Assembly (NCBI GenBank): GCA_950097015.1
Contig: CATNEN010000038.1
Coordinates: 7,440,001-7,504,000, forward strand
DNA from: Macrostomum hystrix
Taxonomy: Eukaryota; Animalia; Platyhelminthes
DNA: 64,000 nt
Direction of reading: 5' to 3'
In this document: positions 2,294 to 63,259 of the stretch, piece after piece
Position numbering within the stretch: position 1 is the first letter of the stretch
How the letters are laid out: every line of letters starts with the position of its first letter
Notes under the pieces: model-generated
What the model was told of the DNA's origin: nothing
The model's database searches: none
What the model saw: only the letters and a program-made list of their open reading frames with translations
Program-made: the position numbers and the translations under genes

Positions 2294-2643
<350 letters not shown>

Positions 2644-3235: not shown

Positions 3236-4215
3236 GTCAGGGAGGGTGTCAGTACAGAGCCTAAGAGGATCAGGGAGGGTGTTAGTACAGAGCCTAAGAT
3301 GATCAGGGAGGGTGTCAGTACAGAGCATAAGAGGATCAGGGAGGGTGTCAGTACAGAGCATAAGAGGATCAGGGAGGGTGTCAGTACAGAGCATAAGAGG
3401 ATCAGGGAGTGTGTCAGTACAGAGCCTAAGATGATCAGGAAAGGTATCAGTACAGAGCCTAAGATGATCAGGAAAGGTATCAGTACAGAGCCTAAGATGA
3501 TCAGGAAAGGTATCAGTACAGAGCCTAAGATGATCAGGGAAGGTATCAGTACAGAGCCTAAGATGATCAGGAAAGGTATCAGTATAGAGCCTAAGATGAT
3601 CAGGAAAGGTATCAGTACAGAGCCTAAGATGATCAGGGAAGGTGTCAGTACAGAGCCTAAGATGATCAGGGAAGGTGTCATTACAGAGCCTAAGATGATC
3701 AGGGAAGGTGTCAGTACAGAGCCTAAGATGATCAGGGAAGGTATCAGTATAGAGCCTAAGATGATCAGGAAAGGTATCAGTACAGAGCCTAAGATGATCA
3801 GGGAAGGTGTCAGTACAGAGCCTAAGATGATCAGGGAAGGTGTCAGTACAGAGCCTAAGATGATCAGGGAAGGTGTCAGTACAGAGCCTAAGATGATCAG
3901 GAAAGGTATCAGTACAGAGCCTAAGATGATCAGGAAAGGTATCAGTATAGAGCCTAAGATGATCAGGAAAGGTATCAGTACAGAGCCTAAGATGATCAGG
4001 GAAGGTGTCAGTACAGAGCATAAGAGGATCAGGGAGGGTGTCAGTACAGAGCATAAGAGGATCAGGGAGGGTGTCAGTACAGAGCCTAAGATGATCAGGG
4101 AAGGTGTCAGTACAGAGCCTAAGATGATCAGGGAAGGTGTCAGTACAGAGCCTAAGATGATCAGGGAAGGTGTCAGTACAGAGCCTAAGATGATCAGGGA
4201 AGGTGTCAGTATAGA
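3236..4215. repeat. 33-bp minisatellite (GATCAGGGAAGGTGTCAGTACAGAGCCTAAGAT)n
   Basis: About 30 copies; a unit length divisible by 3 produces the three overlapping repeat ORFs. Confidence 0.97.
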
Positions 4216-15265: not shown

Positions 15266-19809
<4,544 letters not shown>

Positions 19810-35612: not shown

Positions 35613-38600
35613 TCAGTCTGAGTCGTCGGATCCTGAAGAAATCTTCGGACCGGCCACCTCGGCGTCTTCGTCATCATCGCTGCTGGACAGCACCGCGGCG
35701 CGTCGCTGCTTCGTCGGCGACGCACCGACAACGGCAGCGGAATCGACGGCAGGTGCGACAGAATCACCGCCGGCTCCATCAGCGTTGTCCTCTGACTCGG
35801 ACCCCGATGATAATAGCTTGGAGCGCTGAACCCGAGCCGCGGCACCGGTGTCCGAATCCGAGTCAGAACCGCGGCGACCGCCGTCCGAGTCGGAGCCATC
35901 CGATGATGCACCCGAAGACGAATCGCCGCCAGCGCCGCCGCCAAAAATGCTGGCAGCCGTGCGGGCCGCCTCCGAGGACATCATCGCCTTCCGCTTGCTG
36001 CGCTGTCGCTGCTGCTTCTTCTTGGATTTGGCTTTGCTGGCTCCACGCTGCGACTTCTGCTGCTGACGTTGACGCTTGGCGCCTGAGGCGGAGGTGGCCG
36101 ACTGCTTCCGCTTGCGCTTACGGCCGGCACCGTCCTCATCGTCACCGTCGGACAAGTCGGAAGATGAGGCCGACGACGAACCGGACGATGCAATAGCAGG
36201 CCGGGGAGTGGCCGACACCTTCGGGCGAGTCGCCGAATCATTGTTGCCATTGTTTTCCTCCTCGTCGGAGGAAGACGACGATGACGACGATGAGCTGCCG
36301 CTGCTGCTGACGAAGGCCCTAGACTTGACGTTCTCCCGCTGGCGCTTAGTCAGGCCGTCTTCGTCGTCAGCCGCCGATGCCGCAGCCTGATGGCGACGCC
36401 GCTGCTTGGACTCGCTGCCGACGCCGCCACGTCGCCGTTTTCGCTTGCTGCCGCCGGCCTCTTCGTCGCCGCTCATTTCGGCGGCGGCAGATCGTCGACC
36501 AGATTTGCCGCCACTGGCCGGTGGTTCGGCCAGCTGAATCAGCGGCGTCTCCAGCAGCTGCCGGTTGCGCTCCAGCACCAGGCGGCGGGCCTCTCGGATG
36601 GCCAGGTCGCGCTCGGCCTCTCGCTGTCGCCGCTCCTCGGCTTCGCGCTGCTCCCGCTCGCGCAGCTCGGCAATGCGGGCGGCCTGCTCTTCGCGGGCGG
36701 CCTTCTCGCGCTCGTCCAGCTGGCGCGCCCGACGAACGTGATAATCGGCCTGCCGCAGCAGGTCGGCGCAGGCCACCGCCTCGCGGCCGGCTCCTGGAAA
36801 GCTGACCCCGCCGGAGGCTGCCGAGGTGCCACTGCCAGAAGCGGCCACGTCGGCCAGCCAGCGGAATGAGCGCTGCGCCAGTTTGAGATCCTCCACCGCG
36901 GATTGCACCTAGATTGGGAGACAATAGATGTCTGGGAGCTAGTTTTCTGTTGGGACATCAGGCTAATACGAGTAATAATAATAACAAAAATAATTGCAGG
37001 AGGGCCGCGGTCAATGGCACATTATTTGGTGACGCTAGACCAGAAGCCAGCGAGAAGGCAATTCTGGGAATTTCGCTGACTCCTGAGCACACACGCACAC
37101 AGATACCGTATGCAGGCACACACTCACACAGGTGTGTACATCTGCCCCGTCTTTCTCATCGTCAGACAGTGTACACTCTCCCTGTGCTTTGGAGGTTGGC
37201 ACACAAGGGCGTAAATTTTACGACAAGCCCTCAGCCTTTTTCTATGTGGCCTCCCCGCGGATTCGAGGTCAGGGACATTGGTGCGAGAGGCACCGCTCAC
37301 CGCTCACCGCTCTGTCACTCACCCCGGACATCAGGCTACCTGATAGACTCTTAAACCAAGGGTCCGCTGTACGATCCGATTTATCGAGTCCATGGACTTT
37401 GGGGCCACAGCACCCACTTAAATTGCTTCTGTTTGGACTGGGATTCGAACTCCCGACCTATTTAGTAGAATTTCGAAAGTCCAACCACTGGGCAACAAAG
37501 GCTTGAAAAAAAACGAATTCGCAGTTTCGCTTCCCAGCAGACTCACATGAGCATAGGAGCTCTTCTCGTCCTGCAGCGTCACGGAAGCCAGGCGCTGCTG
37601 CACCAGGGCCAGGTTGTAAATCACAGTGTGGTCAGCCGGATGAGCGTGCTTGGCCCGGAGCAGCACTGTGCGGCACTGGCGCAGCTGGCCGGCTTTGAAG
37701 TGAGCCCTAGCCAGGTACTGCAGCAGCTCCAGGTTGTTGTGCCGCTGGAATTTCTTCATGCAGTTTTCGTACATCTGCACGGCGGCCACGAAAGACTTTT
37801 GCTCCACGTGGATGTGGGCGATGTTGATCCACACGTCGGCGAACTCCGCGGTGGCCTCGCGAACCTGGCGATTGAGATGAGACGAGAATAATTTGGAGTA
37901 CCAGGGCGAGCTTGAGTCATTCTGCCACCTAGGGCTGTAAGAACTTGATGATCTAATGTCATACAAATATGTGTTGTGTTACTCCAAAACTACAGGCAGT
38001 CACACCAAACTACTGACAACACCTCACACATTGCAGTCAGTCACTCACACATTACAGACAGGCACTCACACATTACAGTCAGTCACTCACACATTATAGT
38101 CCCTCACACACAGCAGACAGGCACTCTGAAATTACAGACCGGCACTCACACATTACAGACATCACTAACACATTACAGACATCACTAACACATTATAGAC
38201 AGGCACTCACACATTACAGACATCACTAGCACATTATAGACATCACTAACACATTATAGACAGGCACTCACACATTACAGACATCACTAACACATTATTG
38301 ACAGGCACTCACACATTATAGACAGGCACTCACACATTACAGACATCACTAACACATTATTGACAGGCACTCACACATTACAGACAGGCACTCACACATT
38401 ACAGACAGGCATTCACACATTACAGACAGGCATTCACACATTACAGACATCACTAACACATTACTGACAGGCACTCACACATTACAGACATCACTAACAC
38501 ATTACAGACAGGCACTCACACATTACCAGTCAAAAACAGGCAACTCACCTGAGCGAACACATCCCTGGCCTCGTTGATGTAGCCCTTGTGAGCCAGCACG

Positions 38601-47259: not shown

Positions 47260-48318
47260 CTACAGAGTGTCAAACTCCGAGAAGAATAGACCAATATTAA
47301 ACAATTTCTGCTGGGTGATGCTATCGATGGCTTCAACACCGCACCGCTGCAGCACCATGAGTCTCCATTCCTTGGCGGTGAAGTCAGCAGGTACCATGGC
47401 GAACTCTTGCTGCACGTCTGGCTGGCTCAGCTGGCGTTTTACAGCAGCCTTAAAAGTCCTGTGTGCTAGCTCCACCGGGTTGAGAAATGGTGAATACGGA
47501 GGAAAAACTCGAATGCTTATGCGATCCTTGTACTCCTGCGGAATTTGCAGGCCTTGGTGGAACCGGGCACCGTCAAGCAGAATCACACTGGAGTGACCAT
47601 CCTGCAGCTGGGCAACAATCCTTGGGCAGATGCGTTGCACGAACATTTGTACACATTGAACACATTGCCGATCTCCATGCAGGCTGTAATCCACCGGGTC
47701 AGTTGATGGCGACGTAGCCAGAATGAGGTTGACAGATGGGCTCTTCTGGGTGTGAACGTTCCTTCGAACTCGTGTTCCACGAACACTTCTGCCGAAGCCG
47801 CGTCGAGTCCAGACTCCGTAGCCGGATTCATCGAGGTGCACCAGTTCGACGAACGGTGGTAGGTTGACCAACCATTGAGCGAAATCCTGCCTCTTTGCTT
47901 TGTTCTCTTCTGTGTTTCGTGCCTCGGGAACGTCACCTTCCCTCGAAGGACACTTCATGGTGAAAAGATGTCCATCCAATGATCGTGATATCGTTGAAAG
48001 GTAGACACTCTCCAGGGTACCATGAAACTCAGCCAGCAGGGTAGTGCGCAGCTGCTGCAACGTGAGAAACGGGTTGTCCTCCACCGCAGCTAGCAGAAAG
48101 TCATTCATAGGCTCGGTGAGCTTTCGATTCTTGGTTCCACCCCTGGGCAGTGCATGGCGTCTCCCTTCCAAATCAAAGGCGTGGCAGATGTTGTACACGG
48201 AGGTTCGCTTGATATCCAGCATTCGAGAAATTTCGCTCACTGGCTCACCTCTTTGCCAGGCTTGAATGACGAGGTCTCTTTTTTCTCGAGTTATTTTAGC
48301 GTACGCAGGATTCTCCAT
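47260..48318 (-). mobile_element. IS630/Tc1/mariner-superfamily transposase ORF (HTH + DDE)
   Basis: N-terminal HTH (ISRMLDIKRTSVYNIC), PRGG linker, second HTH (NPFLTLQQLR...LSTISRSL), catalytic HLDESG / LLDGARFH / PPYSPFLNPVE. TIRs not identified. Confidence 0.9.
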
Positions 48319-48689
48319 TCTGAGTCTCTTGATTACGAACAGTAAAATGGTGTCAACATGTTTGCGCAGCCAAATTTAAAAGCCTGTTTGTGTTTCTTGG
48401 ATTTAGCCATAGACAAGTGTCTATGGTACAGCTAGGTTTGAATGTCTAAATTGAAAGCCCACTTGTCTAATTTAAAAGCCCGTCTGTGTCTTTCAGAGTT
48501 GGCCATAGACAGCAGTCGCTGGTTGGAGCAGCAGACAACTTAGTGTCCAATTTAAAAGCCCGCTGTCCCAACTAGACCGCAAAATGCTATTATTAGCAAG
48601 TAGCATTACTAGCAAGTTTTGCCCCCCAGTTGACCATGATCCCCCAGTTGACAATGATTCCCCTTTAGGGAATAGAGACTGCATGCATT

Positions 48690-49880
48690 GGAATGAAGAG
48701 ATTGGATTGAAATCAAAAGACTGGGTTGGAAAGAAGAGATTGGATTAGAATGAAGAGATTGGATTAGAATGAAGAGATTGGATTAGAATGAAGAGATCGG
48801 ATTAGAATGAAGAGATCGGATTAGAATGAAGAGATTGGATTGGAATGAAGAGATTGGATTGGAATGAAGAGATTGGATTGAAATCAAAGGACTGGGTTGG
48901 AAAGAAGAGATCGGATTAGAATGAAGAGATTGGATTGGAATGAAGAGATTGGATTGGAATGAAGAGATTGGATTGAAATCAAAGGACTGGGTTGGAAAGA
49001 AGAGATTGGATTAGAATGAAGAGATTGGATTAGAATGAAGAGATTGGATTAGAATGAAGAGATTGGATTAGAATGAAGAGATTGGATTAGAATGAAGAGA
49101 TTGGATTAGAATGAAGAGATTGGATTAGAATGAAGAGATTGGATTAGAATGAAGAGATTGGATTAGAATGAAGAGATTGGATTAGAATGAAGAGATCGGA
49201 TTAGAATGAAGAGATTGGATTGGAATGAAGAGATTGGATTGGAATGAAGAGATTGGATTGGAATGATTGGGTTAGAATGAAGAGATTGGATTGGAATGAA
49301 GAGATTGGATTAGAATGAAGAGATTGGATTGGAATGAAGAGATTGGATTAGAATGAAGAGATTGGATTAGAATGAAGAGATTGGATTAGAATGAAGAGAT
49401 TGGATTAGAATGAAGAGATTGGATTAGAATGAAGAGATTGGATTAGAATGAAGAGATTGGATTAGAATGAAGAGATTGGATTAGAATGAAGAGATTGGAT
49501 TAGAATGAAGAGATTGGATTAGAATGAAGAGATCGGATTAGAATGAAGAGATTGGATTGGAATGAAGAGATTGGATTGGAATGAAGAGATTGGATTAGAA
49601 TGAAGAGATTGGATTGGAATGAAGAGATCGGATTAGAATGAAGAGATTGGATTGGAATGAAGAGATTGGATTGGAATGAAGAGATTGGATTGGAATGAAG
49701 AGATTGGGTTAGAATGAAGAGATTGGATTGGAATGAAGAGATTGGATTAGAATGAAGAGATTGGATTGGAATGAAGAGATTGGATTAGAATGAAGAGATT
49801 GGATTGGAATGAAGAGATTGGATTAGAATGAAGAGATTGGATTGGAATGAAGAGATTGGATTAGAATGAAGAGACTGAAG
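48690..49880. repeat. 19-bp satellite (TTGGATTAGAATGAAGAGA)n
   Basis: About 60 copies. Confidence 0.97.
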
Positions 49881-49899
49881 AGACTCATTCATGTAATAT

Positions 49900-50160
49900 T
49901 GTGTGTCTGTGTACGCATTCCAATAGTGTGCATGCGTCTGTGTACGCATTCCAATAGTATGTAAGCGTCTGTGTACGCATTCTAATAGTGTGTAAGCGTC
50001 TGTGTACGCATTCCAATAGTATGTAAGCGTCTGTGTACGCATTCCAATAGTGTGTAAGCGTCTGTGTACGCATTCCAATAGTGTGTAAGCGTCTGTGTAC
50101 GCATTCCAATAGTGTGTAAGCGTCTGTGTACGCATTCCAATAGTGTGTATGCGTCTGTGC
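49900..50160. repeat. 31-bp minisatellite (GCGTCTGTGTACGCATTCCAATAGTGTGTAA)n
   Basis: About 8 copies. Confidence 0.95.
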
Positions 50161-52664
50161 AGGCGGGAGTCGCCCGTCGCGCCATAGCCGACCGGAACGG
50201 AATAATACAATGCCATAGACACAAATTCGCTTGCTTTGGGTCAGCCTAGAATTTGGATACCCACGTGGTAAGCAGTGCATACCATCAGACTTTTATATGT
50301 TAAATCCCAGTTGGCGCTCACCAGATCACCGCGCGATCCTAGATCCCTAGCTATGCAGGCACCACTGCCTGCCACTGTTTTACTGCAGATTCCAAGAAGG
50401 ACTTCGGCAACCAGGAAGGATGCCGAAATTGCGGTCTTTTATTTCTAAAGTATGGGTTAGAGGGACTAATAAACAAATAAATATGAAAATAAATAATTAT
50501 AGCCGCAAATAAAGCTATTTTTATAGGTATAGCAACAAAATTAGTTTACACGTGAAGCCAATTTTTATAGGTGTAGCACTTGTTTTTGTTACAGGTGCAT
50601 TGCCGAACTGCCAATTAGCACGACACTTTTGCACGGGAACTTTCTCCCGCCGAGATTCACCCATTATATTTTACTGCAAAACGTCCTAAAGTAATTTTTT
50701 ACATTTCCAGTCTAGTTCACGTCGCGCTCTAGACTACCTAATGGTTAAAAAGTTGCGCACTGCCCTCAAAGGAAACACAATCTGATTGTTCACACAATAG
50801 AGGACTCACTAAGTTGGGCCATGCTGCGAGCTAAGTATTATTCTATATTTCAATTAAACAAGGCTCAAGGTGCGTCAAAGAAGGAAGTGCATGGTTTAAA
50901 CCAGGAAGGACTTCGGCAACCAGGAAGGATTTCTGGTCTTTTATTTCTAAACAATATTTCTCAACTTTTCAATTAATGAAGCTAAATCTTTTCCCTAACC
51001 ACGATTTCTCAAATACCAATTCGTAAGGACATTGTTTTAATAAGTACATGGGAGTTAGACATCGCTAAATAAGTGCTATAACAATATAGCGCTTCAAGTT
51101 TTGATGTCTCTTGTCTTCACTTATAATTTGTCTAGCGGTTTGTTGCAGTCTAAATGTCTTGAAGGCTATAACTCCTAACGATTATCGACACTCAGTATAC
51201 CGGCTGGCTGTGATGGTCTCTCAGGATCGTTATCTTAGAACCAACTTAAGAAATAACACAAACACAATGAGTTTTCTAATATGTTTAACTTAACGGAATT
51301 CAAATGGAATCTCTAACTGACTCGAGTGGCGGTTCTTTTTCCGCGCTCCGCACCAATATATATAGTATCTTTAAAACCCCTCGATCCGAGGGGGAGATAA
51401 TACCATAGCAACAGTACGCATGGGAATTTGGGGTGAGTGAGGTCGCAGCCTCGAGTCTAGTAAAGATATTGTCATTAAACTAGTTGTTTGGTAGGCACAC
51501 CAACCACTTTCCTATGGAGGGTGGGTGAAAGTCTTAAAAACGCCTTAGTTGAGTTAGGATGTGTTCCCACTTCTATTGAGACCTCTTTCCTACTGTTCAT
51601 TATCCCCTTTCCCTTCATCGATCCAGTCTTCTTGTGCGGTTCCGGCCTCCTCCGGATCTCGTTCCCGATCGGGTCCGGGCGGCTCCAATTTCAGGCTGGG
51701 CTGGGTCGATGCAGGCAGCTGCAGGTCGGGACAGGCCGGGTTGATTCCGGGAGCTCCACGTCAGCACAGCTGCGTTCCGGTCTCGGGCCATTCCACGTCA
51801 GCACAGCTGCAGATCCGGTCTCCGGCAGTTCCGCGTCAACGCCTCTGCGGATCCGGTCTCAGGCAGCTCCACGTCGGCACAGCTGCTGCCATGCCGAACC
51901 GGGCCTGCGCTGAAATGAATAGTTGATCTCTGGGGGCGGATTTTGTCTAATCATTCTCCTTTCGGTTGCTCGCACTTTCTGCTGTTGGTATTTTTAGCTT
52001 TCGCTTCCTGCTGACGAACTCTTAAATTCCCTTCAGATTTCTAAGTCTTATAAACAACAGCTGTCTTCCACACAGCTCAATTAAGTTTGTCCGAAGTTAT
52101 ATACTCTCGCAACAACGCTATTTATTTAAGTGATTTTTGTTTATATCGGATCTGGACACAATCACCTTGGAAAAAACTAAGCAATCATTTAGAAATTTAC
52201 CTTTTTTTGCTTTGAGCAGCGCTGCCGATAGCAAAACACAGCCTTCATCTCATTTAGTCACAACTGCAACCGGATTGGTCCACGCAACTTAACATTATTC
52301 ATTATTTGGTTGCTTGTGTTGAATCTTGAATAAAAATATACAGTCTATATATATCAGACAGTAAATTCCTTGTTAACTGATGCTATTTTTTATGCAAAAA
52401 AATTCTTCAATTTTATGCTCCAGTGTAGTTTTGATTTTCAAACGAAACTTATTGCCAATAATATGAGCTCGACAAAAGTCACCAGTCCGGCAGAAGTCGC
52501 TAGAAGTGGTAAGTCTATTAACTATTGTTGAATCCCAATGGACAACCTGGGGGTCGTTGCATAGAATTGACAAGTTAAATGCGACAAGTTACAAGTCGAC
52601 AAGTGACATAAAATATATCAACTTATATCAACTTATCAATTTAGTGCAACTGTTACAAAGGACA

Positions 52665-52990
52665 AGAGAATTTCATGTGGGAAAAAATGTGGTTTCCACG
52701 TGCAAGGAAGAGTACGGGTTTGACCCTTGTCCAGGGAAGGACTATGCGTATGTACGAGACGTCCTTTGGCCTAACTTAAAGCGTCATACTTTGGAGAAGG
52801 TCGACTCACTAAGTAAAACGGGTGCTGCTGGTGGATCTGAAAGCAAGCTTAATGACGTACAAGAACTGGTGTTGGATATCCTGGACAAGAGATCTGGTCT
52901 TGTGGTTGGCTTGACTGTGCCCGAGACGTATGAACTGAGTCCTGCGACTGAGACAGTTGGTGCCACATCGTCCACTGAGGCGGTCGGCTG
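52665..52990 (+). pseudogene. Myb/SANT-like DNA-binding fragment (Harbinger-associated type)
   Basis: VRDVLWPNLKRHTLEKVD..SKTGAAGG...LNDVQELVLDIL....V.GL follows the W.NLK...K...TG.GG...L..E.VL.IL pattern; N-terminus missing. Confidence 0.6.
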
Positions 52991-53450
52991 CCAGCCAATC
53001 AGTCTTGCACATAACCAATAGTCTATGGTCACTTAGGTAGTTTTGACTCTAAAGACCACGTGGGTTTTTACAAATGCACTCAGTTTTCTTTCTTTCTGTA
53101 TCTCTAAAAATATTAGCCACCTAGCCTATAGCCACCAAAACCTAGAAAACGGGCCAAAATTTTCCGCTCTATCCGATTTTACAATTTCTAAACCATAACC
53201 ATCGTATAAAGGGCAGAAAATGTGAACGGCCAGATGGTGGACTTTCGCTAAAATCGGTCATTCGGTTTGGGAGCTGTCGCGAAGTAGGCAGTGGGTATTT
53301 AAAATACCCTCGTGGTGTTTCCACAGGTGGAAAACAGCGTGTCTTATTCCAAAAAGGACATATTGTAGGCATATGTGCCTAGATGCCTACAGCTTAGAAA
53401 AGCTTTTTCAAAGGAAAAAAGACCATTGAGCAGCTGGAAAGCTGGAGAAA

Positions 53451-53614
53451 TTCTTGCTACTTCGAGCTGGTCGAGTGGGACGACACGGGCTTCTTCGATG
53501 ACGCTGAGGAGCTCGGAGAATCTTCCGAGCAAGCTGTCCAAGTTCAGGCGGCAGCTGAGCGTCTTCTGCAGTGTATTCGCGTACAAATGTTAAGCGAATT
53601 CATGTATAAACGGT
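53451..53614 (+). other. Near-identical duplicate of the 3' end of the terminal STING-like domain
   Basis: 53451-53574 matches ~57560-57683 with only a few substitutions (SCYFELVEWDDTGFFDDAEELGESSE.A.QVQAAAERLLQC). The frame continues IRVQMLSEFMYKR to a possible phase-1 donor T|gtaaat at 53614/53615. Confidence 0.85.
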
Positions 53615-53914
53615 GTAAATACTTATTAAAAAACTGTTCCCTACGTGAACTATTCGCTCATTCTTGTCGTCCAACGCACTAAAAGTTTATTTAATAAGTA
53701 AAAAAAAATCTGTATTTGTACATGACTTTGTAACGTCGTTATAATTGAATATTAAATATTGAATATTGAATATTGAATAGATATTTCATGACCTAAATCT
53801 GTTGGTCATGAATCATGTTACAGCCAGTCATTTCATCATTGTTGGCGGTGCTCATAAAATGATACTCGTAAAATGCTTAATTCATTTCCCCAAACCATAA
53901 ACTGACGCCTGCAG

Positions 53915-56900
53915 CCACACTGCTGATTTTTGGCCACCTGGACCAGCCACCTGTGATCAAGGAAGCCGAGATTTCGATTCAGTCTAGCCTGTCCGGCGCC
54001 AGCACCTTCTACTTTTGGAACAAGAATTACGATCCGACCTGTAGCTACAGTCGACTGGCTGACGAAATCTCTGATAGCCATCAAATTGTGCTCTTGATCA
54101 ACTGCCGGCCTCCAGCACTCTCTGAGCTGCTCTGCCACCTGGCTATGGTCAGGGTAAGAACTCATTGGCTTGAAAATACTTGTGGTAAAGTTGAATACGT
54201 TTTCTCCATGGGCTTTATATACAAATATGAATAAATGAGGAGGGGATTTTACGGCCTCCCCACGTCCCCAGTCCATGGACTCAACAGTAGTGATCAAATG
54301 GGTTTTAGCCTAGAGGTTAGAGCGTCGGAGTCTAAACTTGAAGGTCAGGGGTTCGATTCAAGAGTGAACTGGAACAATTTGTTAAGTTAAAGTTAAATGT
54401 AGCAAGTCATTTAACTCTGCATAGCCAGCAGTTGCTGGAGTAATTGATGTAGGTGTTGTGTCCCCACGTAAAGAAAGGTGTAAAGGTGTAATAAAGGTGT
54501 AATAAAGAAAAACAAAACAGACTTCCACAGCGAAAATGTGACCAAACTGTGCAATGTGTGTCGTTTTTATTTCATTGATGCAATATTCTACGCTGACCGC
54601 TTGTAGCGACGCATAACGTAACAATACAATTATATTACCTGTCTGCTTTTAAAAATGAACTTCAGTGCGTCAACGAAAGCAAGCGAATAATTCACGTAGT
54701 GAAAAACTTTCGCGACAACGGCGAGCCACTGCTTCAGCATCGCCGCATACGACAGATGGTTCACTACTACGACCTGTGCTCCAACAGCGGCGCACTTGAT
54801 GAACTGCTCATCAACCTCAAGTCACAGAATGAGCAGGGTTCGTATTCTTGAATCTAGCTTTGTATTCTTATTCTGTTGATACACTCGCTGGTGAATGATT
54901 TATAGGAGGCTGTAGGCAGGAAGATGATCAGTGTACAGATTGAAGATCAGAGTGGTTTTAGTGGTCTGGGATTCCAATCTCCACCTTGGAGAACAGGTTT
55001 TTATCATTTGACAGTACCTCACATCGCCTCACTTCAACCAGCAGTAAAATTTGTACCAGAATCAGAGTGGGTTTTGCAGCTACCCTCCAGTCCGTGGACA
55101 CAGGGGTAGATTTTATTTAATATATTCTGGCAGTAATGGGGAGAAATTCACAGACACTATACGGCAAAAAACTATTTAGAACATTCAGAAAGCAGCGGTG
55201 CTATTCAGAACCTCGGCGAGGGCCTCGCCTGGCAGCTGTCGGTCGGCTTCCTGTCCTGCATCTTGCCCAGGCTTGAAAGCGTCATTCAAGCGAGCCTAGC
55301 CGACTTTCAACCGCCTCCACCGCTGGTTCGTGACGAGGTGCTCGTTCTGCCCAAGTACTTCATGCTGCTCAAACCAGAGCTAGTGACGGAGTCAATCGTG
55401 GGACCTTGCACGCCCCAGCCCCCTGAGCTAGTCGGTGGTTGCCAGATAATTCCAGACGTGACCATCAAATTTCCAAGTCACGGATATGAGAAGTACGTCC
55501 AACCTTACCTGATGAAGCTGGACATCAAGAACTCAAAGATTTCTCACATTGTCCTCTTCGGCGGATACGCCGCGCCAACATTCGCCATCCGGAGGCTCGA
55601 GGATGTCAGCGACGCTCAAAAGAAAGAAATTTTCGCCGACTTTCAGGAGGCCCTTTATTTCATCTGCAGCCATCCCGACTTTGAGAAGTTGATGAACAAG
55701 CTCGACTCGGACACCCGAGCCATCGATCTCTCCCACTCGCCCACTGCGTCCAGCAATCTCGTTCTGGTCAATGATCCCGACCAGATGCTGCAAGACATTG
55801 TAGCTAGAGAGGCCAGAAACTTCGTGGCCCGGCAAAGTCAAGATCTCGAAGTTCCAGTAGCCGAGACGCCTGCTGAGGCGCAAGTCCCTCGGCGCTTGCT
55901 ACTGGCTTTCAGCCCCTCAGTGCCAGCTGACTCGGTGACTCTCTTGCGTGCCACGCTGGTCAGACAAACTGGCATCGAAGCTACTGCGAATGTATCTGAA
56001 GACTTTGCCAGAGCTGTACTGGTGCTGCATCTGACAGACCTGCTGCAAAGCTGTGAGGCCAACAGTCCCGCGCTAATGATCACCATTGAGCAGCTGGTAA
56101 TCAAGGTTAGCAAACCGCAGAAATTTACTGCTCAATTCCTATTTCCCTTTAGACGCATCCGTGAAAATCTCATTTCAGATGCACACTGATGGTGAGTACA
56201 ACATCGCTGTGATTGTTATGTTCGGCAACGAGCACAGAGAATATCTGCAACAACGGGACATCTTCGACTGCTTGCCAAGTTTGCTAAGACACCTGCCAGA
56301 CAGCTGCGTTGTGAAGCTGGCATTCGAAACTTCAGCAGTTGAAGATGTGGATGAAGCCCTTGGCCAGATGTCTGTGCAGGCAGACGAGTTTCAAAGTAGA
56401 GATCCTGGCAGCGACCCCAAAGTGCGCTTTGCGTTTCCCAATGAATTGGAATCCGAGGGTCGCAGATTGTCTGATGTCGTCAGTGCACTGCGTAAGATTC
56501 TCACATTTCCAGAGTTCTTAAAAATACTTTGAGCACATTTGCTTTGAAATTTCATTTCACTATAAAATAAGACTCAGAGCTAAAACAGTTTCAGAGCTCA
56601 ATGATAGTAATTAATATTTGCGCGGGGCTGCGCGCAATGGCACATCATTTGGTGACATTTGGTGACATTTGGTGACATTTGGTGACATTTGGTGAGCGAG
56701 GAGGCGATTCTGCCCATTTCGCAGACTCTTGAGCACATACACAGATACTGTACGCAGGCACACGCTCACACAGATGTTTATACATTGTGCCCTGACTTTC
56801 CCATCGTCAGACAGTGTACACTTCACTGTGCCTCTGAGGTTGGCCCTTAAGGGTGTAGATGGCACGACAAGCCCCCAAGCCTTCTCTCCACGGCTGCGCA

Positions 56901-57698
56901 CAAATGAATGCGGCCTCGCCACGGAATCGAGCTCAGGGACCTTGGTGCGAGAGGCGAACGCGTTAACCGCTCTGCCACTCACCCCCTTTCAGAGCTGAAC
57001 TCGCATGTCAAAGCTGGGGATATCCAGCCATTGCTGTCCGTCGCGCCTTCAATGGTCGCCAATATTATCGGTTTCATCGAGCCGCTGATTGCCCGTGAGT
57101 GAAAGACTAGTCATTTCAGAGTGCCAGCTTGGTGTTAAAGCCCAAGCTCTTTTGCTCGAGTATTCTGCGCCTCATTAAGTGAGCAAAAAGTATGAATTTT
57201 TCAGATGCCCAAGCTACGAGGGGCGCGGGCATGGAGTCGGTTTACAATGGACGCTACTACTTTGTGCTACCGAAGAGCTGTCGCTATCCTGATGAAGGTA
57301 ATCTGCATGCGATTCTCGAGAGACCGCCACTGAACATCCGCATTGACAGACGGCGCTTCACCGACACCGCCACAAACAGACAGTATAACATCCGCGTGTA
57401 CCAGCGGGCAGATCGGGAAGCAGCCTTCGAGTTCCCTCCTTCCCTATGGAGTCTCCACCGTCTCGTTCACAGCGCAATCAGCGGACTGAGCCACCGTCGC
57501 ATCATGGCCAACGTCGAGTGCTTCAAGGAGCGCCTAAAAAAGCTCGAGCGGCATCATCGTTCTTGCTACTTCGAGCTGGTCGAGTGGGACGACACGGGCT
57601 TCTTCGATGACGCTGAGGAGCTCGGAGAATCTTCGGAGCCAGCTGCCCAAGTTCAGGCGGCAGCTGAGCGTCTTCTGCAGTGTCTGAACCTTAGTTAA
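53915..57698 (+). CDS. Soluble TIR-STING-TIR-STING-like protein (tandem STING cyclic-dinucleotide-binding domains), at least 6 exons, ~750 aa
   Basis: Exons 53915-54153, 54666-54837, 55180(or 55189)-56105, 56179-56491, 56993-57094, 57205-57698; all GT-AG, phases 1/0/1/0/1/1 join into one open frame; AATAAA overlaps the stop. STING-1: NLGEGLAWQLSVGFLSCILPRLESVI versus human [26 protein letters not shown]. STING-2: SVAPSMVANIIGFIEPLI...RYYFVLPKSCRYPD...NRQYNIRVY...AFEFPPSLWSLHRL..SAISGLS...VECFKERLKKL versus RLYILLPLDCGVPD...DRVYSNSIY...VLEYATPLQTLFAM..YSQAGFS...AKLFCRTLEDIL. TIR-like alpha/beta segments precede each STING domain. Start exon uncertain. Confidence 0.8.
54298..54470 (+). mobile_element. 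SINE family B (CORE-like) in an intron of the STING-like gene
   Basis: GGTTTTAGCCTAGAGGTTAGAGCG...GAAGGTCAGGGGTTCGATTC, then GCAAGTCATTTAACTCTG (CORE-like). Confidence 0.75.
56620..56987 (-). mobile_element. SINE family A, full length, in an intron of the STING-like gene
   Basis: tRNA-like head GGGGGTGAGTGGCAGAGCGGTTAACGCG...GCTCGATTCC, conserved body, internal (CATTTGGTGA)5 expansion near the 3' end. Confidence 0.85.
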
Positions 57699-58279
57699 TA
57701 AAGCAAATGAGTTCAAGCACAAATCACAAACAGAGAGTTTGTGATTGAATTGTTCAAGTTTCGCGAATTGTTATTCAGCGTTCAAAAACCTTTTTAGAAG
57801 TCGCTTTGACTAATTTGCACTCGGGGGATGTTGCATCCAGCAACTCCCAATTTTATTTTCCCTCATTTATCGATTGCTACCCTGCGCCGTTTGTGTCGAT
57901 CTCTATGTTGTCACACATTCATTGAAATCGCATCTCAATTGGTCGACACGTCCAAAACATGCAGCCTTTTGGTCAGCTTTTATGTCCACTTTTTTCGCCG
58001 TGCTGCACAAAGTTCACCTCCGACTTGGTTGTTAAGTTTAAATATGCCCGTAGCAGCAGCATAGAAGTGTACAATTACTTTATCTATAAAACTGGAAGCG
58101 TGCAAGCAAAGTATGGAAATTTACACGTCTTGTCTGTCCTTAAACTAATCAGATCGGTTGTTTCACGACGGTAGTATTTCCCCACCCTATGGAGGCCCAA
58201 TATGTAATGAGGGCTATAGCACAGATTTACAACCGAACATGTAAAAACTATCGCATAGCCTGGGGTAACAAGCCTGGGG

Positions 58280-58633
58280 TTGACACCTGGATGTTTTGAG
58301 ATAGTGTCAGAAGGAGGTACGGAGTTTGTACGCGTCGCTGTCGTCATGCTGTCTAAAAATGTTAAAGCGTCGTTGAACGAGAAGGCATTCAAGGATCTCA
58401 AGTTAGCTCGGATGTACAGCGTGCAAGACAAAACTGTTTGTCCCGTCGAAGCCTTTAAAATGTACGTCTCTCAACTACCGAATGGATGTGAGGTGTTGTT
58501 CCCAAGGCTCAATAAGTCTGGCTTCTCAGCCTGCCAACGACTAGGCAAAGATTCACTTGGAGACTTCATGAAGAATCTGAGTGCGTGTCTGGCGAACAAA
58601 AAAATGGTAACGCATCAAGGCTACAAATTATGA
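58280..58633 (+). pseudogene. Crypton-like tyrosine recombinase / DUF3504 fragment
   Basis: SKN...RMYS....CPVEAFKMYVSQLP....LFPR......RLGKDSLGDFMKNLS matches the DUF3504/CryptonA pattern; both ends truncated. Confidence 0.75.
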
Positions 58634-58905
58634 TTGTCTAAAAGAGTTACAATGCTTGCTAATTACCCTTTCTCACCTGCATGGTGGAACTTCTTGACTT
58701 TCATCTGGTGGTGGAACCTACGAGTACTTGAGCTGAATAGCTAAATCCACAGAATATTACACAGAATGCTCAGTCGAGCTCTCTGCATGAAAATAGCTGT
58801 GCCAGAAAAATGTGCAATTAAGCCTATACTCTTGTGGTGAAGAAAAGTTAGTAGCATACTACCATGAAATTCTAGGATCTGTGCCGCAGAAGATTATTTG
58901 CGTGG

Positions 58906-61900
58906 TGTTACGTTTGAGGAACACGAAGGCACTTGGGTTTGTGAATTGCAGAAGAGCGTTATTAGAGCAGCTCCAAGTTGGCATGAGCCTAAAGCTCGCT
59001 GTTATATTTCTTTACCCTTAAGGGGCATTGAAGCTTCTAGCAAACAAGATGTACAGTAGCATTTTGCCTCAATGGCACATAGACTACTTTTAGACGAGAA
59101 TAAGTCTATAAATAAATCTGCATAGCATGCAGCATATGCAACACCCCCACCGATGCTGAAAAACGTCAGTAACCCAAACGATCAGGGGGTCGACGTTGGC
59201 GAGAACTCCGCCTCAGTTCTTGCGCCGTTTCCGTAGCTTGATTAGCCGTGACGTCGGTAGTTTTTTCCTCCGAGACGGGTTTTTGATTCTGGTCGGAATC
59301 AGATCCGTCAGTCACGTCATGAAGCTTTGGTATAATATCCGATTGATGTACCAGCCGACCCTTGTCGTCACGAAAGGTATTGGTTCCGACGGAAGTAGTA
59401 ATCATTGACGGAACCCTCTCTTCCTTGTGTTCCACACGAATGAAGACTGGTTCGGCTTGTAGTCGAGGTTGAATCCAGTCAGTGCACACTCTTGACAAGC
59501 GAGTTCTTGGCAGTTGAAGAAACACCAAACCAGCAGGAATAGAACCATTGCATTGCGGTGTAGTATTGTGAAACAGACAGAACGCGATTGCAATTCGCTC
59601 TAGTTCAGCCGCGTCAGAAGTAGCGTTTGACTTCTTTAGATGAAATTTAAACTCTTCTATTATCCGCTCCACTTGCCCATTCGACTGATGGTGACCTGGA
59701 GGAGTCAGAAGGTGCTGAACGAAGTTCTCCTTTAGGAACGTGGCGAATTCGGCGGACGTGAAATTTGTACCGTTGTCTGTCACCAAGGTTTGTGGGAGAC
59801 CCATGTAATTAAATGTTTGTCGAAATGCCCGAATTACAGATTGCGATTTCATTGAATCGATATGCCGAACATCCGCCCACTTCGAGAATGCGTCTACTAG
59901 CACTAGGAATCGGTGTCCTTTGAATATCGCGACGTCTGCGTGTACTCTCTCGAAGAACGTCTGCGCATCTTCCCAAGAGGATAAATTGGAGTTAGTTCGC
60001 TTTCTTGCGTGAAGCTGACACTGTGCACACCTTCGAACGAAGCAGTTTATCTGCGTGTCGATTCCTGGCCACCAGAAATACTGTCGTGCCAAACGAATCA
60101 TGCGCACAACTCCGGGATGATTTTCATGGAGCAGGTGTAAAATTTCCGTTCGTAATTCACTGGGTGGAACGATCCGCAATCCTTTAAACACAACACCGTT
60201 CTGAATAGTATACTCAAGCTTCCCTTTTGAGTAAGGCAACATGACTTTCGGTAAGTACTCCGGCCATCCACCCTGAATGTAATGCTTCAGTGTCTGCAGA
60301 TGGCAGTCATTCGTCTTAGCAATTCGACGCAGTAGATCTTCGGAATTCGCAAAAGTGTCCAGGGCATTTATTGACAGTAGGTTGACGGATTCCTTCGTTA
60401 TGCAATTGCCATTTGGAAGTCGCGACAGAGTATCAGCGGCGTACATCGAATCGCCTTTGGAATATTCGATCTTGTAGTCATATGCTCGTAGAATGAGCGA
60501 CCAGCGTTGAAGCCTGGCGGAAACACGTTCAGAAGATTTATTGTGATCGAAAATGAACTGAAGCGGTCTGTGGTCTGATAGAATTGTAAATCTTCTTCCG
60601 GCGAGAAACTGGTGGAAATACTTAACTCCTTCGACGATAGCCAGCGCCTCTCGTTCGATATTTGCGTAATTACCCTCTGCGGGTGTGAGCACTCTGCTTC
60701 CGAGCCAAACAATCTGTCTCTGCTCTCTGTCATGAGAGAGCACGAACCCCAATCCATCCTTTGACGCATCACAAGTCAGAAACAGACGCTTTGACGAGTC
60801 GTAAGCAGTTATCGCTCCTTGTCGGATACTTTGCTTCAATCTCTTGAAGGCCTGTGAATGCTCTTTGTTCCAGAACCAGTGCTGTCCTTTCTTCAATAAT
60901 GAATACAACGGTCGAGCGATGATAGAAAAATTCTTGCAGAACAGACCGTAGTGTCGAAGAGTACACAAGGCGCTTTTTAATTGGTCTTTATCAGTGGGAT
61001 CTGGCATATTATCCCATGCTTCTATTCTCGCTGGATCAGGCTCGAGCTTGCCGTTGTGGATAATGAACCCGAGAAACTTGACGCTTTGTAGGCATTCCTG
61101 TGACTTGCGGGCGTTAATCTTGAACCCATTGTCAGCCAAACGCTGCTTTACCTTGTTTAGCACCAGGATGTGTTGTTGTCGGTCTCCGGGAGTTCCAATT
61201 ATTATATCGTCTTGATACGAAGCAGTGCATTCTACGTTTCTGAGCACATCATCCATGACTTCTTGGAAGATTAATGGTGCTGCGGAAATTCCAAACTGAA
61301 GATTTTTGAAAGCGAAGTAGCCCAGGTGCGTAGATATGCAGGTAAGTTTCTGGCTCTCAGGAGAAAGCGCAACTTGAAGAAACGCGTCTTCTAAATCCAA
61401 GACTGAATAGTACTTGGCATTAGGAATTTTAGAAAGGATTTCTTCTAGCTTTGGAAGCTTGTAGCGATCGGCATCGATTATGCGATTAAGCGTGACTGAG
61501 TAGTCGCCACATAGACGTATTGGTCTCGCTGAGCCTTGCTGCTTTAAAACTGGAACAATTGGCGCAGAAACGGTTGGGTCTTCCACTGGATATATAATGC
61601 CTGCATTTAGCAGTCGCTTGAGCTCGGTCTCAACCATGGACTTCATAGAAAAGGGCAAAGATCTGGCTGGATATCGCATGCCGTCCGTTCTAGCATCTGA
61701 GCGGAGGCGGAAACTCGCGAGAAATCTCGAACTTGCATCACGCACCACTGGCATGCAAAGAAGATCTTCTGAAATACTTCCGTCGATGTGTAGTATGTGC
61801 AGGCGCGATAGGAAATCCATTCCCAGTATAGCCAATAAATCGCTGCCTACATACACTTTTCCCGTGGCAGATCTTCCATCGGACAGAGTAATCGTTGCAT

Positions 61901-63259
61901 CCTGAATGACTGAGTATATTTCTGGCTGGAATCCGCCGTACGACTTAAGCGTTTTAGTAATTGGTTTGAATTTCAGATTGGAACCGTCAGCAACGTGCTT
62001 GGGTATGATGGTAACTTGACTGCCTGTATCTACCAACATCTTAGCACTCGCGTCTCCAATCTTGCATGTAACAAACCACTGATCCGTTGAATGACGATCT
62101 CCGATGTCGGTTGTCGCGTAGATTGCTCCTACATGCCCATGGCTAGAATCCTCTGATCGGCACACGTTCTGCAGAGTATTAACGGTCTTGGAGCGACAAA
62201 CTGCTGCCAGGTGTCCAACCTTCCCACACTTTCGGCACTGCGCATCCCTAAATCGGCACTTTGACCTGACGTGTCCTGCTTTTCCACATGTGTGGCAGTG
62301 ACCAGTTTCACGAGGCTTTGTCGGTCCTTTGCGGTTGTCCAAACTGTGCTGCTGCTTGTGGGCAGGCGTCTTTTCTGGTCTTACCCATCCGGAATGACTC
62401 TTCTTCTGCACCGCCGCGATTGTATCCGGCTTGCTTGTTGCCATCCTAATCGACTCAGACAGCAAACCTTCTTGTATCGCGCCTTCCAAAGTGACATCCT
62501 CTCTTGAAAGAAGCTTTTGCTTTAGCACTTGATTCCGCAAGCCAAATATGTACTGCGACAGAATTAGTTCGTCTCGGAGATCACCGAATCTGCATTTGTT
62601 GGCTTGGCGCTTCAGACATTCGATGTAGGTAGCAATCGATTCACCCTCCTTTTGCACCATGGAGTGAAGCACGTGTCTCTCATAGTGAAGCAATGTTTTG
62701 GGCTTAAAATGTGCGGTTAGCGAATTCTGGATATCATCGAACGTTACTTCCTCCTTCGTGATGTCTTTTGGCTTTGCAAGCTCTTCTATCAGTGTGAAGG
62801 CTGCGTCTCCGCATGTCGCTAGAAGTACTGCTTTGGAGTGAGCTTGCTTCCCTGAAGCCACCAGGTAAAACTGCAGTCTTTTGAAATACTGCTCGATCTC
62901 GGGATAAGAAAGAGGCAGTTCTCCAAGTCGAAAATCCAACGGCTGAGTCATCACTCCTGCGAACGTAAGGTAGTCAGTACACAGCTTCTTCAGTGAATCC
63001 AGTGGTTTTTCCTCGTCGCCATGTTACGTTTGAGGAACACGAAGGCACTTGGGTTTGTGAATTGCAGAAGAGCGTTATTAGAGCAGCTCCAAGTTGGCAT
63101 GAGCCTAAAGCTCGCTGTTATATTTCTTTACCCTTAAGGGGCATTGAAGCTTCTAGCAAACAAGATGTACAGTAGCATTTTGCCTCAATGGCACATAGAC
63201 TACTTTTAGACGAGAATAAGTCTATAAATAAATCTGCATAGCATGCAGCATATGCAACA
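58906..63259 (-). mobile_element. Intact Ty3/Gypsy LTR retrotransposon (Mag-like)
   Basis: Identical 238-bp TG...CA LTRs (58906-59143, 63022-63259); 5-bp TSD CGTGG (58901-58905, 63260-63264); PBS TGGCGACGAGG (63011-63021, complementary to a tRNA-Ser(GCU)-type 3' end); short PPT GGTGGGGG (59144-59151). Confidence 0.97.
59166..62951 (-). CDS. Gag-Pol polyprotein (2 CCHC knuckles, protease, RT, RNase H, integrase)
   Basis: CHTCGKAGHVRSKC and CRKCGKVGHLAAVC; LVDTGS; RLCGDY...YQDDI; TCDAS...IEREALAI...SDHRPL; HENHPG...CAQC; TDNG...NGQVER. Single uninterrupted ORF with ATG at 62951. Confidence 0.97.
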   Translation of the reverse strand: MTQPLDFRLGELPLSYPEIEQYFKRLQFYLVASGKQAHSKAVLLATCGDAAFTLIEELAKPKDITKEEVTFDDIQNSLTAHFKPKTLLHYERHVLHSMVQKEGESIATYIECLKRQANKCRFGDLRDELILSQYIFGLRNQVLKQKLLSREDVTLEGAIQEGLLSESIRMATSKPDTIAAVQKKSHSGWVRPEKTPAHKQQHSLDNRKGPTKPRETGHCHTCGKAGHVRSKCRFRDAQCRKCGKVGHLAAVCRSKTVNTLQNVCRSEDSSHGHVGAIYATTDIGDRHSTDQWFVTCKIGDASAKMLVDTGSQVTIIPKHVADGSNLKFKPITKTLKSYGGFQPEIYSVIQDATITLSDGRSATGKVYVGSDLLAILGMDFLSRLHILHIDGSISEDLLCMPVVRDASSRFLASFRLRSDARTDGMRYPARSLPFSMKSMVETELKRLLNAGIIYPVEDPTVSAPIVPVLKQQGSARPIRLCGDYSVTLNRIIDADRYKLPKLEEILSKIPNAKYYSVLDLEDAFLQVALSPESQKLTCISTHLGYFAFKNLQFGISAAPLIFQEVMDDVLRNVECTASYQDDIIIGTPGDRQQHILVLNKVKQRLADNGFKINARKSQECLQSVKFLGFIIHNGKLEPDPARIEAWDNMPDPTDKDQLKSALCTLRHYGLFCKNFSIIARPLYSLLKKGQHWFWNKEHSQAFKRLKQSIRQGAITAYDSSKRLFLTCDASKDGLGFVLSHDREQRQIVWLGSRVLTPAEGNYANIEREALAIVEGVKYFHQFLAGRRFTILSDHRPLQFIFDHNKSSERVSARLQRWSLILRAYDYKIEYSKGDSMYAADTLSRLPNGNCITKESVNLLSINALDTFANSEDLLRRIAKTNDCHLQTLKHYIQGGWPEYLPKVMLPYSKGKLEYTIQNGVVFKGLRIVPPSELRTEILHLLHENHPGVVRMIRLARQYFWWPGIDTQINCFVRRCAQCQLHARKRTNSNLSSWEDAQTFFERVHADVAIFKGHRFLVLVDAFSKWADVRHIDSMKSQSVIRAFRQTFNYMGLPQTLVTDNGTNFTSAEFATFLKENFVQHLLTPPGHHQSNGQVERIIEEFKFHLKKSNATSDAAELERIAIAFCLFHNTTPQCNGSIPAGLVFLQLPRTRLSRVCTDWIQPRLQAEPVFIRVEHKEERVPSMITTSVGTNTFRDDKGRLVHQSDIIPKLHDVTDGSDSDQNQKPVSEEKTTDVTANQATETAQELRRSSRQRRPPDRLGY

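What the first reader, a model, noticed from the sequence alone, without database searches (positions are those of the whole stretch)
53915..57698. Hidden six-exon gene encoding a soluble TIR-STING-TIR-STING-like protein
Seen: the plus-strand ORF fragments here, plus one exon the ORF track misses (54666-54837), splice with canonical GT-AG sites and matching phases into one ~750-aa frame. Two segments carry STING ligand-binding-domain motifs in the correct order (dimerisation helix GLAW..VGFL..ILP, the YFVLP.SC.YPD strand, the R-x-Y lid, the E-F/Y-x-x-P region and the C-terminal F...L helix). Each is preceded by a ~140-aa segment with TIR-like spacing (TLLIFGH...ADEISDSHQIVLLIN...RIIHVV...YYDL; RLLLAFS...AVLVLHLT...IAVIVMF...LPSLLRHL). 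No transmembrane segment or vertebrate CTT tail is evident. Known: TIR-STING fusions act as cyclic-dinucleotide-gated effectors in bacterial CBASS and occur in some molluscs and annelids, while STING has been described as lost in nematodes and in the flatworms first surveyed. Inference: if this genome is a free-living flatworm, this is a divergent, probably unannotated cyclic-nucleotide immune receptor with doubled architecture.
Basis: partly seen in the sequence, partly recalled or inferred. Interest (0 to 1): 0.95.

Follow-up and report, generated by a model that had tools for sequence, protein, structure and literature searches.

The report
Flatworm soluble double-STING receptor gene
This is a real, spliced and transcribed flatworm gene for a membrane-free protein of about 763 residues with two very diverged copies of the STING immune-sensor fold. 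It matters because flatworms were reported to have lost STING, but the "TIR" label on its two other parts is unproven and oysters already have the same build listed.

Summary
Transcript contigs from three runs of one study, with no mismatches, join every exon it proposed at GT..AG sites. They also add a first exon 1.4 kb upstream that carries the ATG. The gene therefore has seven exons (52463-57698, + strand) and encodes 763 aa, or 779 aa from an earlier in-frame ATG.

No stretch is hydrophobic enough for a membrane helix. The two "TIR" segments are alpha/beta-patterned, but no sequence profile recognises them and the one model covering such a module had low confidence. The only positive lead is a language-model search that placed a paralogue's module next to TIR clusters.

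The gene belongs to a family of at least 12 paralogues. It is the family's longest branch and has lost several ligand-contact residues in domain 1.

This scan has already found the family several times on other DNA of this genome. A 2024 paper lists two-STING, two-TIR proteins in oysters. Ligand binding and output remain inferred.

The parts
52098..52508 (+). Exon 1 of 7: 5' UTR plus the first 15 codons and one base (ATG at 52463; another in-frame ATG at 52415)
   Evidence: A contig joins 52405-52508 to 53915. Separate error-free contigs cover 52098-52383 in all three runs, so the 5' limit near 52098 is inferred. Sequence read.
53915..54153 (+).
   Evidence: Joints 52508>53915 and 54153>54666. 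Aligns with module 1 of P0001, P0003 and the L024 paralogue. No Pfam, PADLOC or BLAST support for any family.
54666..54837 (+). Exon 3: second half of module 1
   Evidence: Joints. Weak similarity to the same exon of paralogues (tblastn E 0.001-0.01).
55180..55844 (+). Exon 4, first part: STING ligand-binding domain 1
55890..56105 (+). Exon 4, last part: first half of alpha/beta module 2, in the same open frame as STING domain 1
   Evidence: Continuous ORF with no stop, so the STING-module fusion is real. Aligns with module 2 of P0002 and P0003. hhalign against the genome's own TIRs: probability 17%, E 0.0014.
56179..56491 (+). Exon 5: second half of module 2
   Evidence: Joints 56105>56179 and 56491>56993. 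BLASTP to P0003 module 2 gives E 0.006.
56993..57094 (+). Exon 6: helix alpha-1 of STING domain 2
   Evidence: Joints. Aligns with the equivalent exon of paralogues. It is one residue shorter than in the paralogues between the P-L and G-F motifs (read by eye).
57205..57698 (+). Exon 7: rest of STING domain 2, an acidic and helical tail, and stop TAA at 57696-57698; AATAAA follows directly
53451..53574 (+). Fragment copy of the last exon's 3' end, lying inside intron 1; not part of the mRNA
   Evidence: 97.6% identical to 57560-57683. Protein-level identity 75% over 56 aa. Contig depth is 0 here.

Best explanation
Shown: this is a transcribed seven-exon gene of a Macrostomum-type flatworm. It encodes a cytosolic 763-aa protein laid out as alpha/beta module 1, STING domain 1, alpha/beta module 2, STING domain 2. 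It is a diverged singleton of a lineage-specific family with at least 12 paralogues here and relatives in M. lignano.

Inferred: the protein is a cyclic-(di)nucleotide receptor. Canonical STING must form a homodimer to build one ligand pocket. Here the two STING domains of a single chain most likely pair with each other and form one asymmetric pocket. Ligand binding would then change how the flanking alpha/beta modules are presented. These modules are probably diverged, possibly non-catalytic TIR-like domains. The change would drive oligomerisation or recruit a partner as the output. The ligand could come from the genome's large set of Mab-21_C (cGLR-like) genes, or directly from bacteria.

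My odds:
- Real, expressed gene: 0.97
- Two STING folds: 0.9
- Modules derived from TIR: about 0.5
- This particular paralogue still binds a nucleotide signal: about 0.45
- Intra-chain pairing of the two STING domains: about 0.4
For: Gene and RNA: six GT..AG joints appear in error-free contigs from three runs, and all exons are open in frame.

Fixed pairing of the two domains: the P0001 model has pTM 0.63 although about 150 of its 582 residues are disordered. That is hard to reach unless the two STING domains hold a defined mutual position. This is my inference; I could not inspect coordinates.

Long retention of the family: three subfamilies pair one-to-one with M. lignano proteins (bootstrap 91-100).

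Soluble: no hydrophobic stretch reaches the membrane-helix threshold.

Possible ligand source: at least 90 Mab-21_C matches in the genome.

TIR lead: every nearest named Atlas cluster for a paralogue's module is a TIR family, at scores 0.90-0.92. hhalign places module 2 on TIR strands A to C in the right order.
Against: - No binding or activity data exist.
- This paralogue's STING domain 1 is the longest branch in the family tree (1.74 substitutions per site against a median of 0.14). That fits either an arms race or relaxed constraint.
- In domain 1 the E-Y-A-T-P motif reads G-Y-A-A-P, so the Glu260 and Thr263 equivalents are lost. By eye, the lid Arg and Tyr equivalents are Tyr and Gln.
- Helix alpha-1 of domain 2 is one residue shorter than in the paralogues.
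- Profiles of the two STING domains do not recognise each other (hhalign probability 2%). The profile of domain 2's last-exon part (helix alpha-1 excluded) finds no PDB STING by sequence.
- Domain 2 of the window itself was not folded.
- TIR is unsupported by Pfam, PADLOC, genome-wide HMM searches and the AlphaFold model. No conserved catalytic Glu could be placed.
- Only one Mab-21 nucleotidyltransferase core is detectable in the genome and no SMODS, so an endogenous synthase is not established.
Confidence: 0.5

Rival explanations
1. The protein keeps the STING fold but no longer binds a nucleotide. It would act as a decoy, regulator or scaffold, for example by pairing with ligand-competent paralogues or with another partner.
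For: It is the longest branch of the family. Domain 1 has lost the Glu260 and Thr263 equivalents and probably the lid Arg and Tyr (partly by eye). Domain 2 has a one-residue deletion in helix alpha-1. The gene is a dispersed singleton flanked by transposons rather than part of the tandem arrays on C2 and C39.
Against: Domain 2 keeps the family-invariant R-x-Y and F-E-x-P. Domain 1 keeps the aromatic residue at the Tyr167 position and the Y-A-x-P motif. The ORF is fully intact over 763 codons and the gene is transcribed. In a single-chain pair, one degenerate half is what an asymmetric pocket would look like.
Confidence: 0.25
2. It is a working nucleotide receptor, but the two STING domains pair between chains rather than within one. 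Domain 1 would pair with domain 1 and domain 2 with domain 2, or they would pair head-to-tail. Ligand would then build chains or filaments, as in bacterial TIR-STING.
For: All solved STINGs are homodimers. Bacterial TIR-STING signals by filament formation (PMC9402430). Two pairing surfaces per chain would favour polymerisation. Both alpha-1 helices are present.
Against: The linker plus module 2 between the domains (about 190 aa) is long enough for intra-chain pairing. Relatives without module 2 (P0001, L002, L003) have a short linker of about 25 residues, which favours a fixed intra-chain pair. The P0001 model's pTM of 0.63 suggests a defined mutual position.
Confidence: 0.15
3. It is a decaying gene copy that is still transcribed but has no function.
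For: Extreme divergence. Transposon-rich surroundings and a stray fragment of its own last exon in intron 1.
Against: There is no stop or frameshift in 2292 nt across seven exons. All splice sites are canonical and used. Domain 1 still folds confidently as STING.
Confidence: 0.05

Closest known systems
[quoted passage not shown]
   Same: Soluble, with no transmembrane domain. Two STING domains in one chain, each listed together with a TIR-type region. A lophotrochozoan animal.
   Different: The oyster domains are recognised by standard profiles. The flatworm ones are not: Pfam STING_LBD is below its cut-off and TIR is not detected. Orthology was not tested. Neither protein has been studied functionally.
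Oyster TIR-STING (PDB 6WT7) and oyster STING with c-di-GMP (PDB 8YDN)
   Different: One STING domain per chain, which must form a homodimer. A clear TIR. 12-19% sequence identity.
Bacterial CBASS TIR-STING and STING (PDB 7UN8, 9LMQ, 6WT4, 8HY9, 7EBD)
   Different: Bacterial proteins have one TIR and one STING, a catalytic TIR Glu, and filament-driven NADase activity. None of these was shown here. I draw no conclusion about descent from the structural match.
Canonical animal transmembrane STING (human TMEM173)
   Same: The ligand-binding-domain fold. Helix alpha-1 motif G-L-A-W...G-aromatic...L-P, matched residue by residue to human 154-173.
   Different: No four-helix membrane domain. No TBK1/IRF3 tail. 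The domain is doubled. Several contact residues are replaced.
Macrostomum lignano proteins P0001-P0003 (P0002 is UniRef A0A1I8HHQ4, named 'Death domain-containing protein')
   Same: The same family. 29-37% identity to exon 4 (BLASTP E 5e-27 to 3e-16) and 26-29% to exon 7 (E 2e-12 to 9e-9) (phmmer E for exon 4). P0002 has the same four-part layout.
   Different: None is an orthologue of the window's gene. P0001 lacks module 2 and P0003 has an extra module. None is annotated as STING, and Pfam finds no death domain.

Membership tests
STING (ligand-binding domain superfamily) | STING LBD fold, domain 1 | tested here: met
STING (ligand-binding domain superfamily) | STING LBD fold, domain 2 | tested here: met
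STING (ligand-binding domain superfamily) | Pfam PF15009 STING_LBD at or above the gathering score | tested here: not met
   Exon 4 scores 13.5 bits against 27, covering only profile positions 1-28. Exon 7 has no hit. Genome-wide there is one match, below the cut-off.
STING (ligand-binding domain superfamily) | Ligand-contact residues (human Tyr167, Arg238, Tyr240, Glu260, Thr263) | tested here: inconclusive
   Domain 1: Tyr167 is Phe, Glu260 is Gly and Thr263 is Ala; the lid residues appear lost, by eye. Domain 2: R-x-Y and E are kept, aligned in register to oyster STING, but that stretch is below threshold on its own.
STING (ligand-binding domain superfamily) | Binds a cyclic dinucleotide | not testable with these tools
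   Needs recombinant protein and a binding assay.
Canonical animal TM-STING | N-terminal four-helix membrane domain | tested here: not met
   The highest Kyte-Doolittle 19-residue mean is 1.58, in helix alpha-1 of domain 2. Exon 1 encodes only 15 polar residues.
TIR domain | Match to TIR sequence profiles (PF01582, PF13676, PADLOC TIR models) | tested here: not met
   No hit at E<=1 for any exon or for P0001-P0003. Six-frame genome searches find 4 and 33 TIRs elsewhere, but none at this gene or its paralogues.
TIR domain | TIR (flavodoxin-like) fold | tested here: inconclusive
TIR domain | Catalytic Glu after strand C (NADase TIRs) | tested here: inconclusive
   Module 1 has a Glu shortly after the third strand. 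The same holds in P0001 and P0003, but the L024 paralogue has Lys there. Module 2 has none at a conserved place. No reliable alignment to TIR exists to place the residue.
Oyster two-STING, two-TIR class | Domain order module-STING-module-STING in one soluble chain | tested here: met
   The order was shown by exon order and the RNA joints. Whether the modules are TIR is open, and orthology with the oyster genes was not tested.

The most novel reading that the evidence does not exclude
A single polypeptide forms a complete, built-in asymmetric STING 'dimer'. One half keeps the lid Arg/Tyr and the Glu, while the other keeps mainly the helix alpha-1 aromatic residue. This pocket is tuned to an asymmetric or non-canonical nucleotide made by the genome's large, unrecognised cGLR-like (Mab-21_C) family. 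The signal passes through two diverged TIR-like modules. That would be a complete cGLR-STING-type pathway, rebuilt in soluble form, in a phylum recorded as having lost it.
Probability: 0.25. Interest if true: 0.8.

Novelty: new member of a known kind. Interest (0 to 1): 0.55.

Why it matters
Wu et al. [quoted passage not shown] Li et al. 2023 (PMC9980059) state that most platyhelminths have no cGLRs beyond Mab21. In five full-text searches of the paper library I found no paper describing STING in any flatworm.

This gene and its family show that a free-living flatworm keeps STING-fold proteins that are too diverged for standard profiles. That changes the loss story and gives a tractable model animal a candidate nucleotide-sensing pathway. 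The one-chain, two-STING layout would also let the rule that STING must dimerise to bind ligand be tested in a natural fused form.

The gain is limited. The layout is already listed for oysters, this scan has reported the family repeatedly in this genome, and this copy is the most diverged one.

Tried and rejected
- Complex prediction on P0001 155-388 against 405-582 gave 'no answer' (score 0.00). My alignment was not used and the partner's own fold was uncertain. This is not evidence either way.
- hhalign of the STING-1 profile against the STING-2 exon profile found nothing.
- The STING-2 exon profile against PDB sequences found nothing relevant.
- The search for homologous proteins with P0002 found only itself, because the word filter was swamped.
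- The Atlas search on P0002 module 2 gave no usable hit.
- PADLOC found nothing.
- phmmer of the L024 module against PDB found nothing relevant.
- Composite alignments A3 and A5, with short exon fragments, were misaligned by MAFFT and were discarded. A6 was used instead.
- ARAGORN found no tRNA in 51000-59000, although the intron repeats look tRNA-like by eye.
- The reading that this is two adjacent genes, TIR-STING plus TIR-STING, is rejected. STING domain 1 and the start of module 2 share one open exon, and contigs run through all the joints.
Every search and fold used single exons by reference, or database homologues. So the window's own modules and its domain 2, each split by introns, could not be folded.
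I re-ran it reading from files only.
Full report
WHAT IS THERE. The window is G000:C38:7440001-7504000 of a 220-Mb flatworm assembly. Earlier notes of this scan call it Macrostomum. The only database relatives of the protein are three Macrostomum lignano-type proteins.

Three runs of one study (X2-X4) hold error-free contigs that skip exactly 52509-53914, 54154-54665, 54838-55179, 56106-56178, 56492-56992 and 57095-57204. Every skipped piece starts with GT and ends with AG. The library type of these runs is not recorded, but contigs that lack the introns and leave them uncovered can only come from spliced RNA. This is one study, so it counts as one independent source.

It ends at 52508 and carries ATG 52463, which has A at -3. 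A second in-frame ATG lies at 52415, and separate contigs suggest a 5' UTR starting near 52098. The fourth exon starts at 55180.

The coding sequence is 2292 nt, or 763 aa (779 from the earlier ATG). All exons are open, and the junction codons are GCC, GAA, CAG and CAT. AATAAA follows the stop, and contigs end by 57745.

All searches used single exons by reference or database homologues.

STING DOMAIN 1. Pfam gives only a weak hit: 13.5 bits against a cut-off of 27, covering profile positions 1-28. A search of the genome itself found 12 paralogous copies of this exon on contigs C39, C2 and C7, at 32-39% identity. A profile of these (A1) finds STING chains in the PDB. All 60 listed hits are STING, best E 2.2e-4. 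Only helix alpha-1 passes on its own, with a sub-threshold second stretch at Y-A-x-P.

In helix alpha-1 the match is gap-free. G-L-A-W is kept, human Gly166 is Gly, Tyr167 is Phe, and Pro173 is Pro. The E-Y-A-T-P motif reads G-Y-A-A-P.

STING DOMAIN 2. Its last-exon part (exon 7, without helix alpha-1) has no Pfam hit. A profile of that exon and its paralogue copies (A2) has no PDB sequence hit and is not recognised by the domain-1 profile. It is, however, clearly homologous to the last exon of seven paralogues (E down to 3e-12). It is also homologous to P0001 441-559 (E 1.4e-11) and P0002 546-669 (E 2e-12).

Domain 2 is split over exons 6 and 7, so I used my last folding job on the homologue P0001 (582 aa: module, STING, STING) with alignment A6. 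Both STING parts came out confident, with block pLDDT of about 80-93.

The full-family profile also aligns domain 2 in register with oyster STING 180-303. The family's invariant R-x-Y falls on R-E-Y, and its F...E-x-P falls on F...E-Y-A-T-P. That stretch is below threshold on its own.

So the second STING fold is well supported for the family and, by homology, for this gene. It was not shown on the window's own residues.

THE TWO 'TIR' MODULES. They are real, conserved family modules. With fragment-aware alignment, exons 2 and 3 line up with module 1 of P0001, P0003 and the L024 paralogue. The end of exon 4 plus exon 5 line up with module 2 of P0002 and P0003. Their strand-helix alternation fits a flavodoxin-like domain.

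Every test of TIR identity was negative or weak:
- Pfam and PADLOC find nothing.
- The genome has 4 TIR and 33 TIR_2 matches, none at this family.
- hhalign against the genome's own TIRs gives probability 17% (E 0.0014) for module 2, aligned in the right order over strands A to C, and 1% for module 1. The two modules do not recognise each other.
- The module in the P0001 model is below pLDDT 50.
- The Atlas feature search of the one module that sits in a single exon (paralogue L024:5212-5682) lists only TIR clusters among its named neighbours. Scores are 0.90-0.92 with 126-153 shared features, a range the tool says is also reached by chance or by distant relatives.

I put TIR descent at about even odds. 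I found no securely placed catalytic Glu.

SOLUBLE. No 19-residue window reaches the usual membrane-helix threshold. The highest mean, 1.58, lies in helix alpha-1 of domain 2.

FAMILY AND CONTEXT. The family varies in layout. L002, L003 and P0001 lack module 2, while L012 and P0003 carry an extra N-terminal module. In a tree of domain 1, three subfamilies pair with M. lignano proteins at bootstrap 91-100, so the family predates that split. The window's gene sits unplaced on by far the longest branch, 1.74 against a median of 0.14.

The gene is a dispersed singleton. A Tc1/mariner-type transposase ORF lies upstream and an intact-looking Ty3/Gypsy-type gag-pol ORF lies downstream.

Genome-wide, PF15009 finds one match, below the cut-off. 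The Mab-21 nucleotidyltransferase core finds one gene, and SMODS finds none. Mab-21_C, in contrast, finds at least 90 matches above the cut-off. I did not assess their catalytic status.

MECHANISM. Shown: the gene model, its transcription, the two STING folds and the absence of a membrane domain.

Inferred: the two STING domains of one chain pair and form one asymmetric pocket, and ligand binding is read out through the flanking modules. Three observations support this. Relatives have only about 25 residues between the two STING domains. The P0001 model reaches pTM 0.63 despite about 150 disordered residues. Contact residues are kept in a complementary way, with R-x-Y and E in domain 2 and the aromatic residue and Y-A-x-P in domain 1.

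The complex prediction gave no answer and counts for nothing.

The main rival is that this very diverged copy no longer binds ligand and acts as a regulator or decoy.

COMPARISON AND NOVELTY. [quoted passage not shown] That class is known only from annotation (PMC11103948). Next closest are oyster TIR-STING (6WT7) and bacterial TIR-STING. Eukaryotic TIR-STINGs are described as rare (PMC10732462).

STING is stated to be lost in flatworms (PMC4117786), and in five full-text searches of the paper library I found no paper on a flatworm STING.

This scan has already reported the same family on other pieces of this genome (s1-395426, s1-843767, s1-845637, s1-846132, s1-398616 and others). My results agree with those notes on the two STING folds and on the unproven TIR. 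I file this gene as a new, highly diverged member of a known kind.

Noticed in passing
window 53451-53574 (+), inside intron 1: A 124-bp copy, 97.6% identical, of the gene's own last-exon 3' end (57560-57683), on the same strand. The flanks are unrelated and no transcript contig covers it. It looks like a stray fragment from a recent partial duplication or gene conversion.
   Followed up: partly
window 56600-56999 (intron 5) and 53200-53399 (intron 1): High-copy repeats. Summed contig depth is 500-3,000 here, against 3-8 over the exons, and many diverged contigs are laid. There is also a short tandem run of a 10-base unit near 56645-56695. Parts look tRNA-like by eye, but ARAGORN finds no tRNA.
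   Followed up: partly
G000 genome-wide; nearest copy at G000:C38:7401635-7401949, 38 kb before the window: At least 90 matches to Mab-21_C (PF20266) above the Pfam cut-off, most in open frames of 400-600 aa and many clustered on C1. Only one match to the Mab-21 nucleotidyltransferase core (PF03281) exists. This points to a large, diverged cGLR-like family in a phylum said to have almost none. Catalytic residues were not assessed.
   Followed up: partly
window 59166-62954 (-): An uninterrupted 1262-aa Ty3/Gypsy-type gag-protease-RT-RNaseH-integrase ORF lies 1.5 kb downstream of the gene. Observed only.
   Followed up: no
window 47260-48318 (-): A 352-aa ORF with HTH and DDE_3 domains (Tc1/mariner-type transposase) lies upstream of the gene.
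   Followed up: no
window 52370-52465: The 5' UTR holds an in-frame ATG at 52415, which would add 16 residues, and an out-of-frame ATG at 52380 that opens a 28-codon upstream ORF. Which start is used is unknown.
   Followed up: no
L002, L003 (C39:4.249-4.254 Mb); L012/L024 (C39:4.228 Mb); P0001, P0003: The family varies in layout. Some members go from STING 1 straight into STING 2 with no module between them. Others carry two modules before STING 1. In L012 a whole module, STING 1 and half of the next module sit in one 554-codon open frame.
   Followed up: partly
P0002 (UniRef A0A1I8HHQ4, M. lignano): A source names this relative 'Death domain-containing protein', but Pfam finds no death domain or any other family in it. 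The reason for the name is unexplained.
   Followed up: partly
window 48001-50000 and 2001-4000: Strong strand composition bias (GC skew 0.49 and AT skew 0.35), probably from simple or satellite repeats. Not examined.
   Followed up: no
window 24327-25121 (-), 37418-37966 (-), 15266-15799 (-): Ordinary exons of neighbouring genes: TACC C-terminal domain, TPR repeats, and a PI3/PI4-kinase fragment. No other immune-type gene was seen in the window.
   Followed up: no
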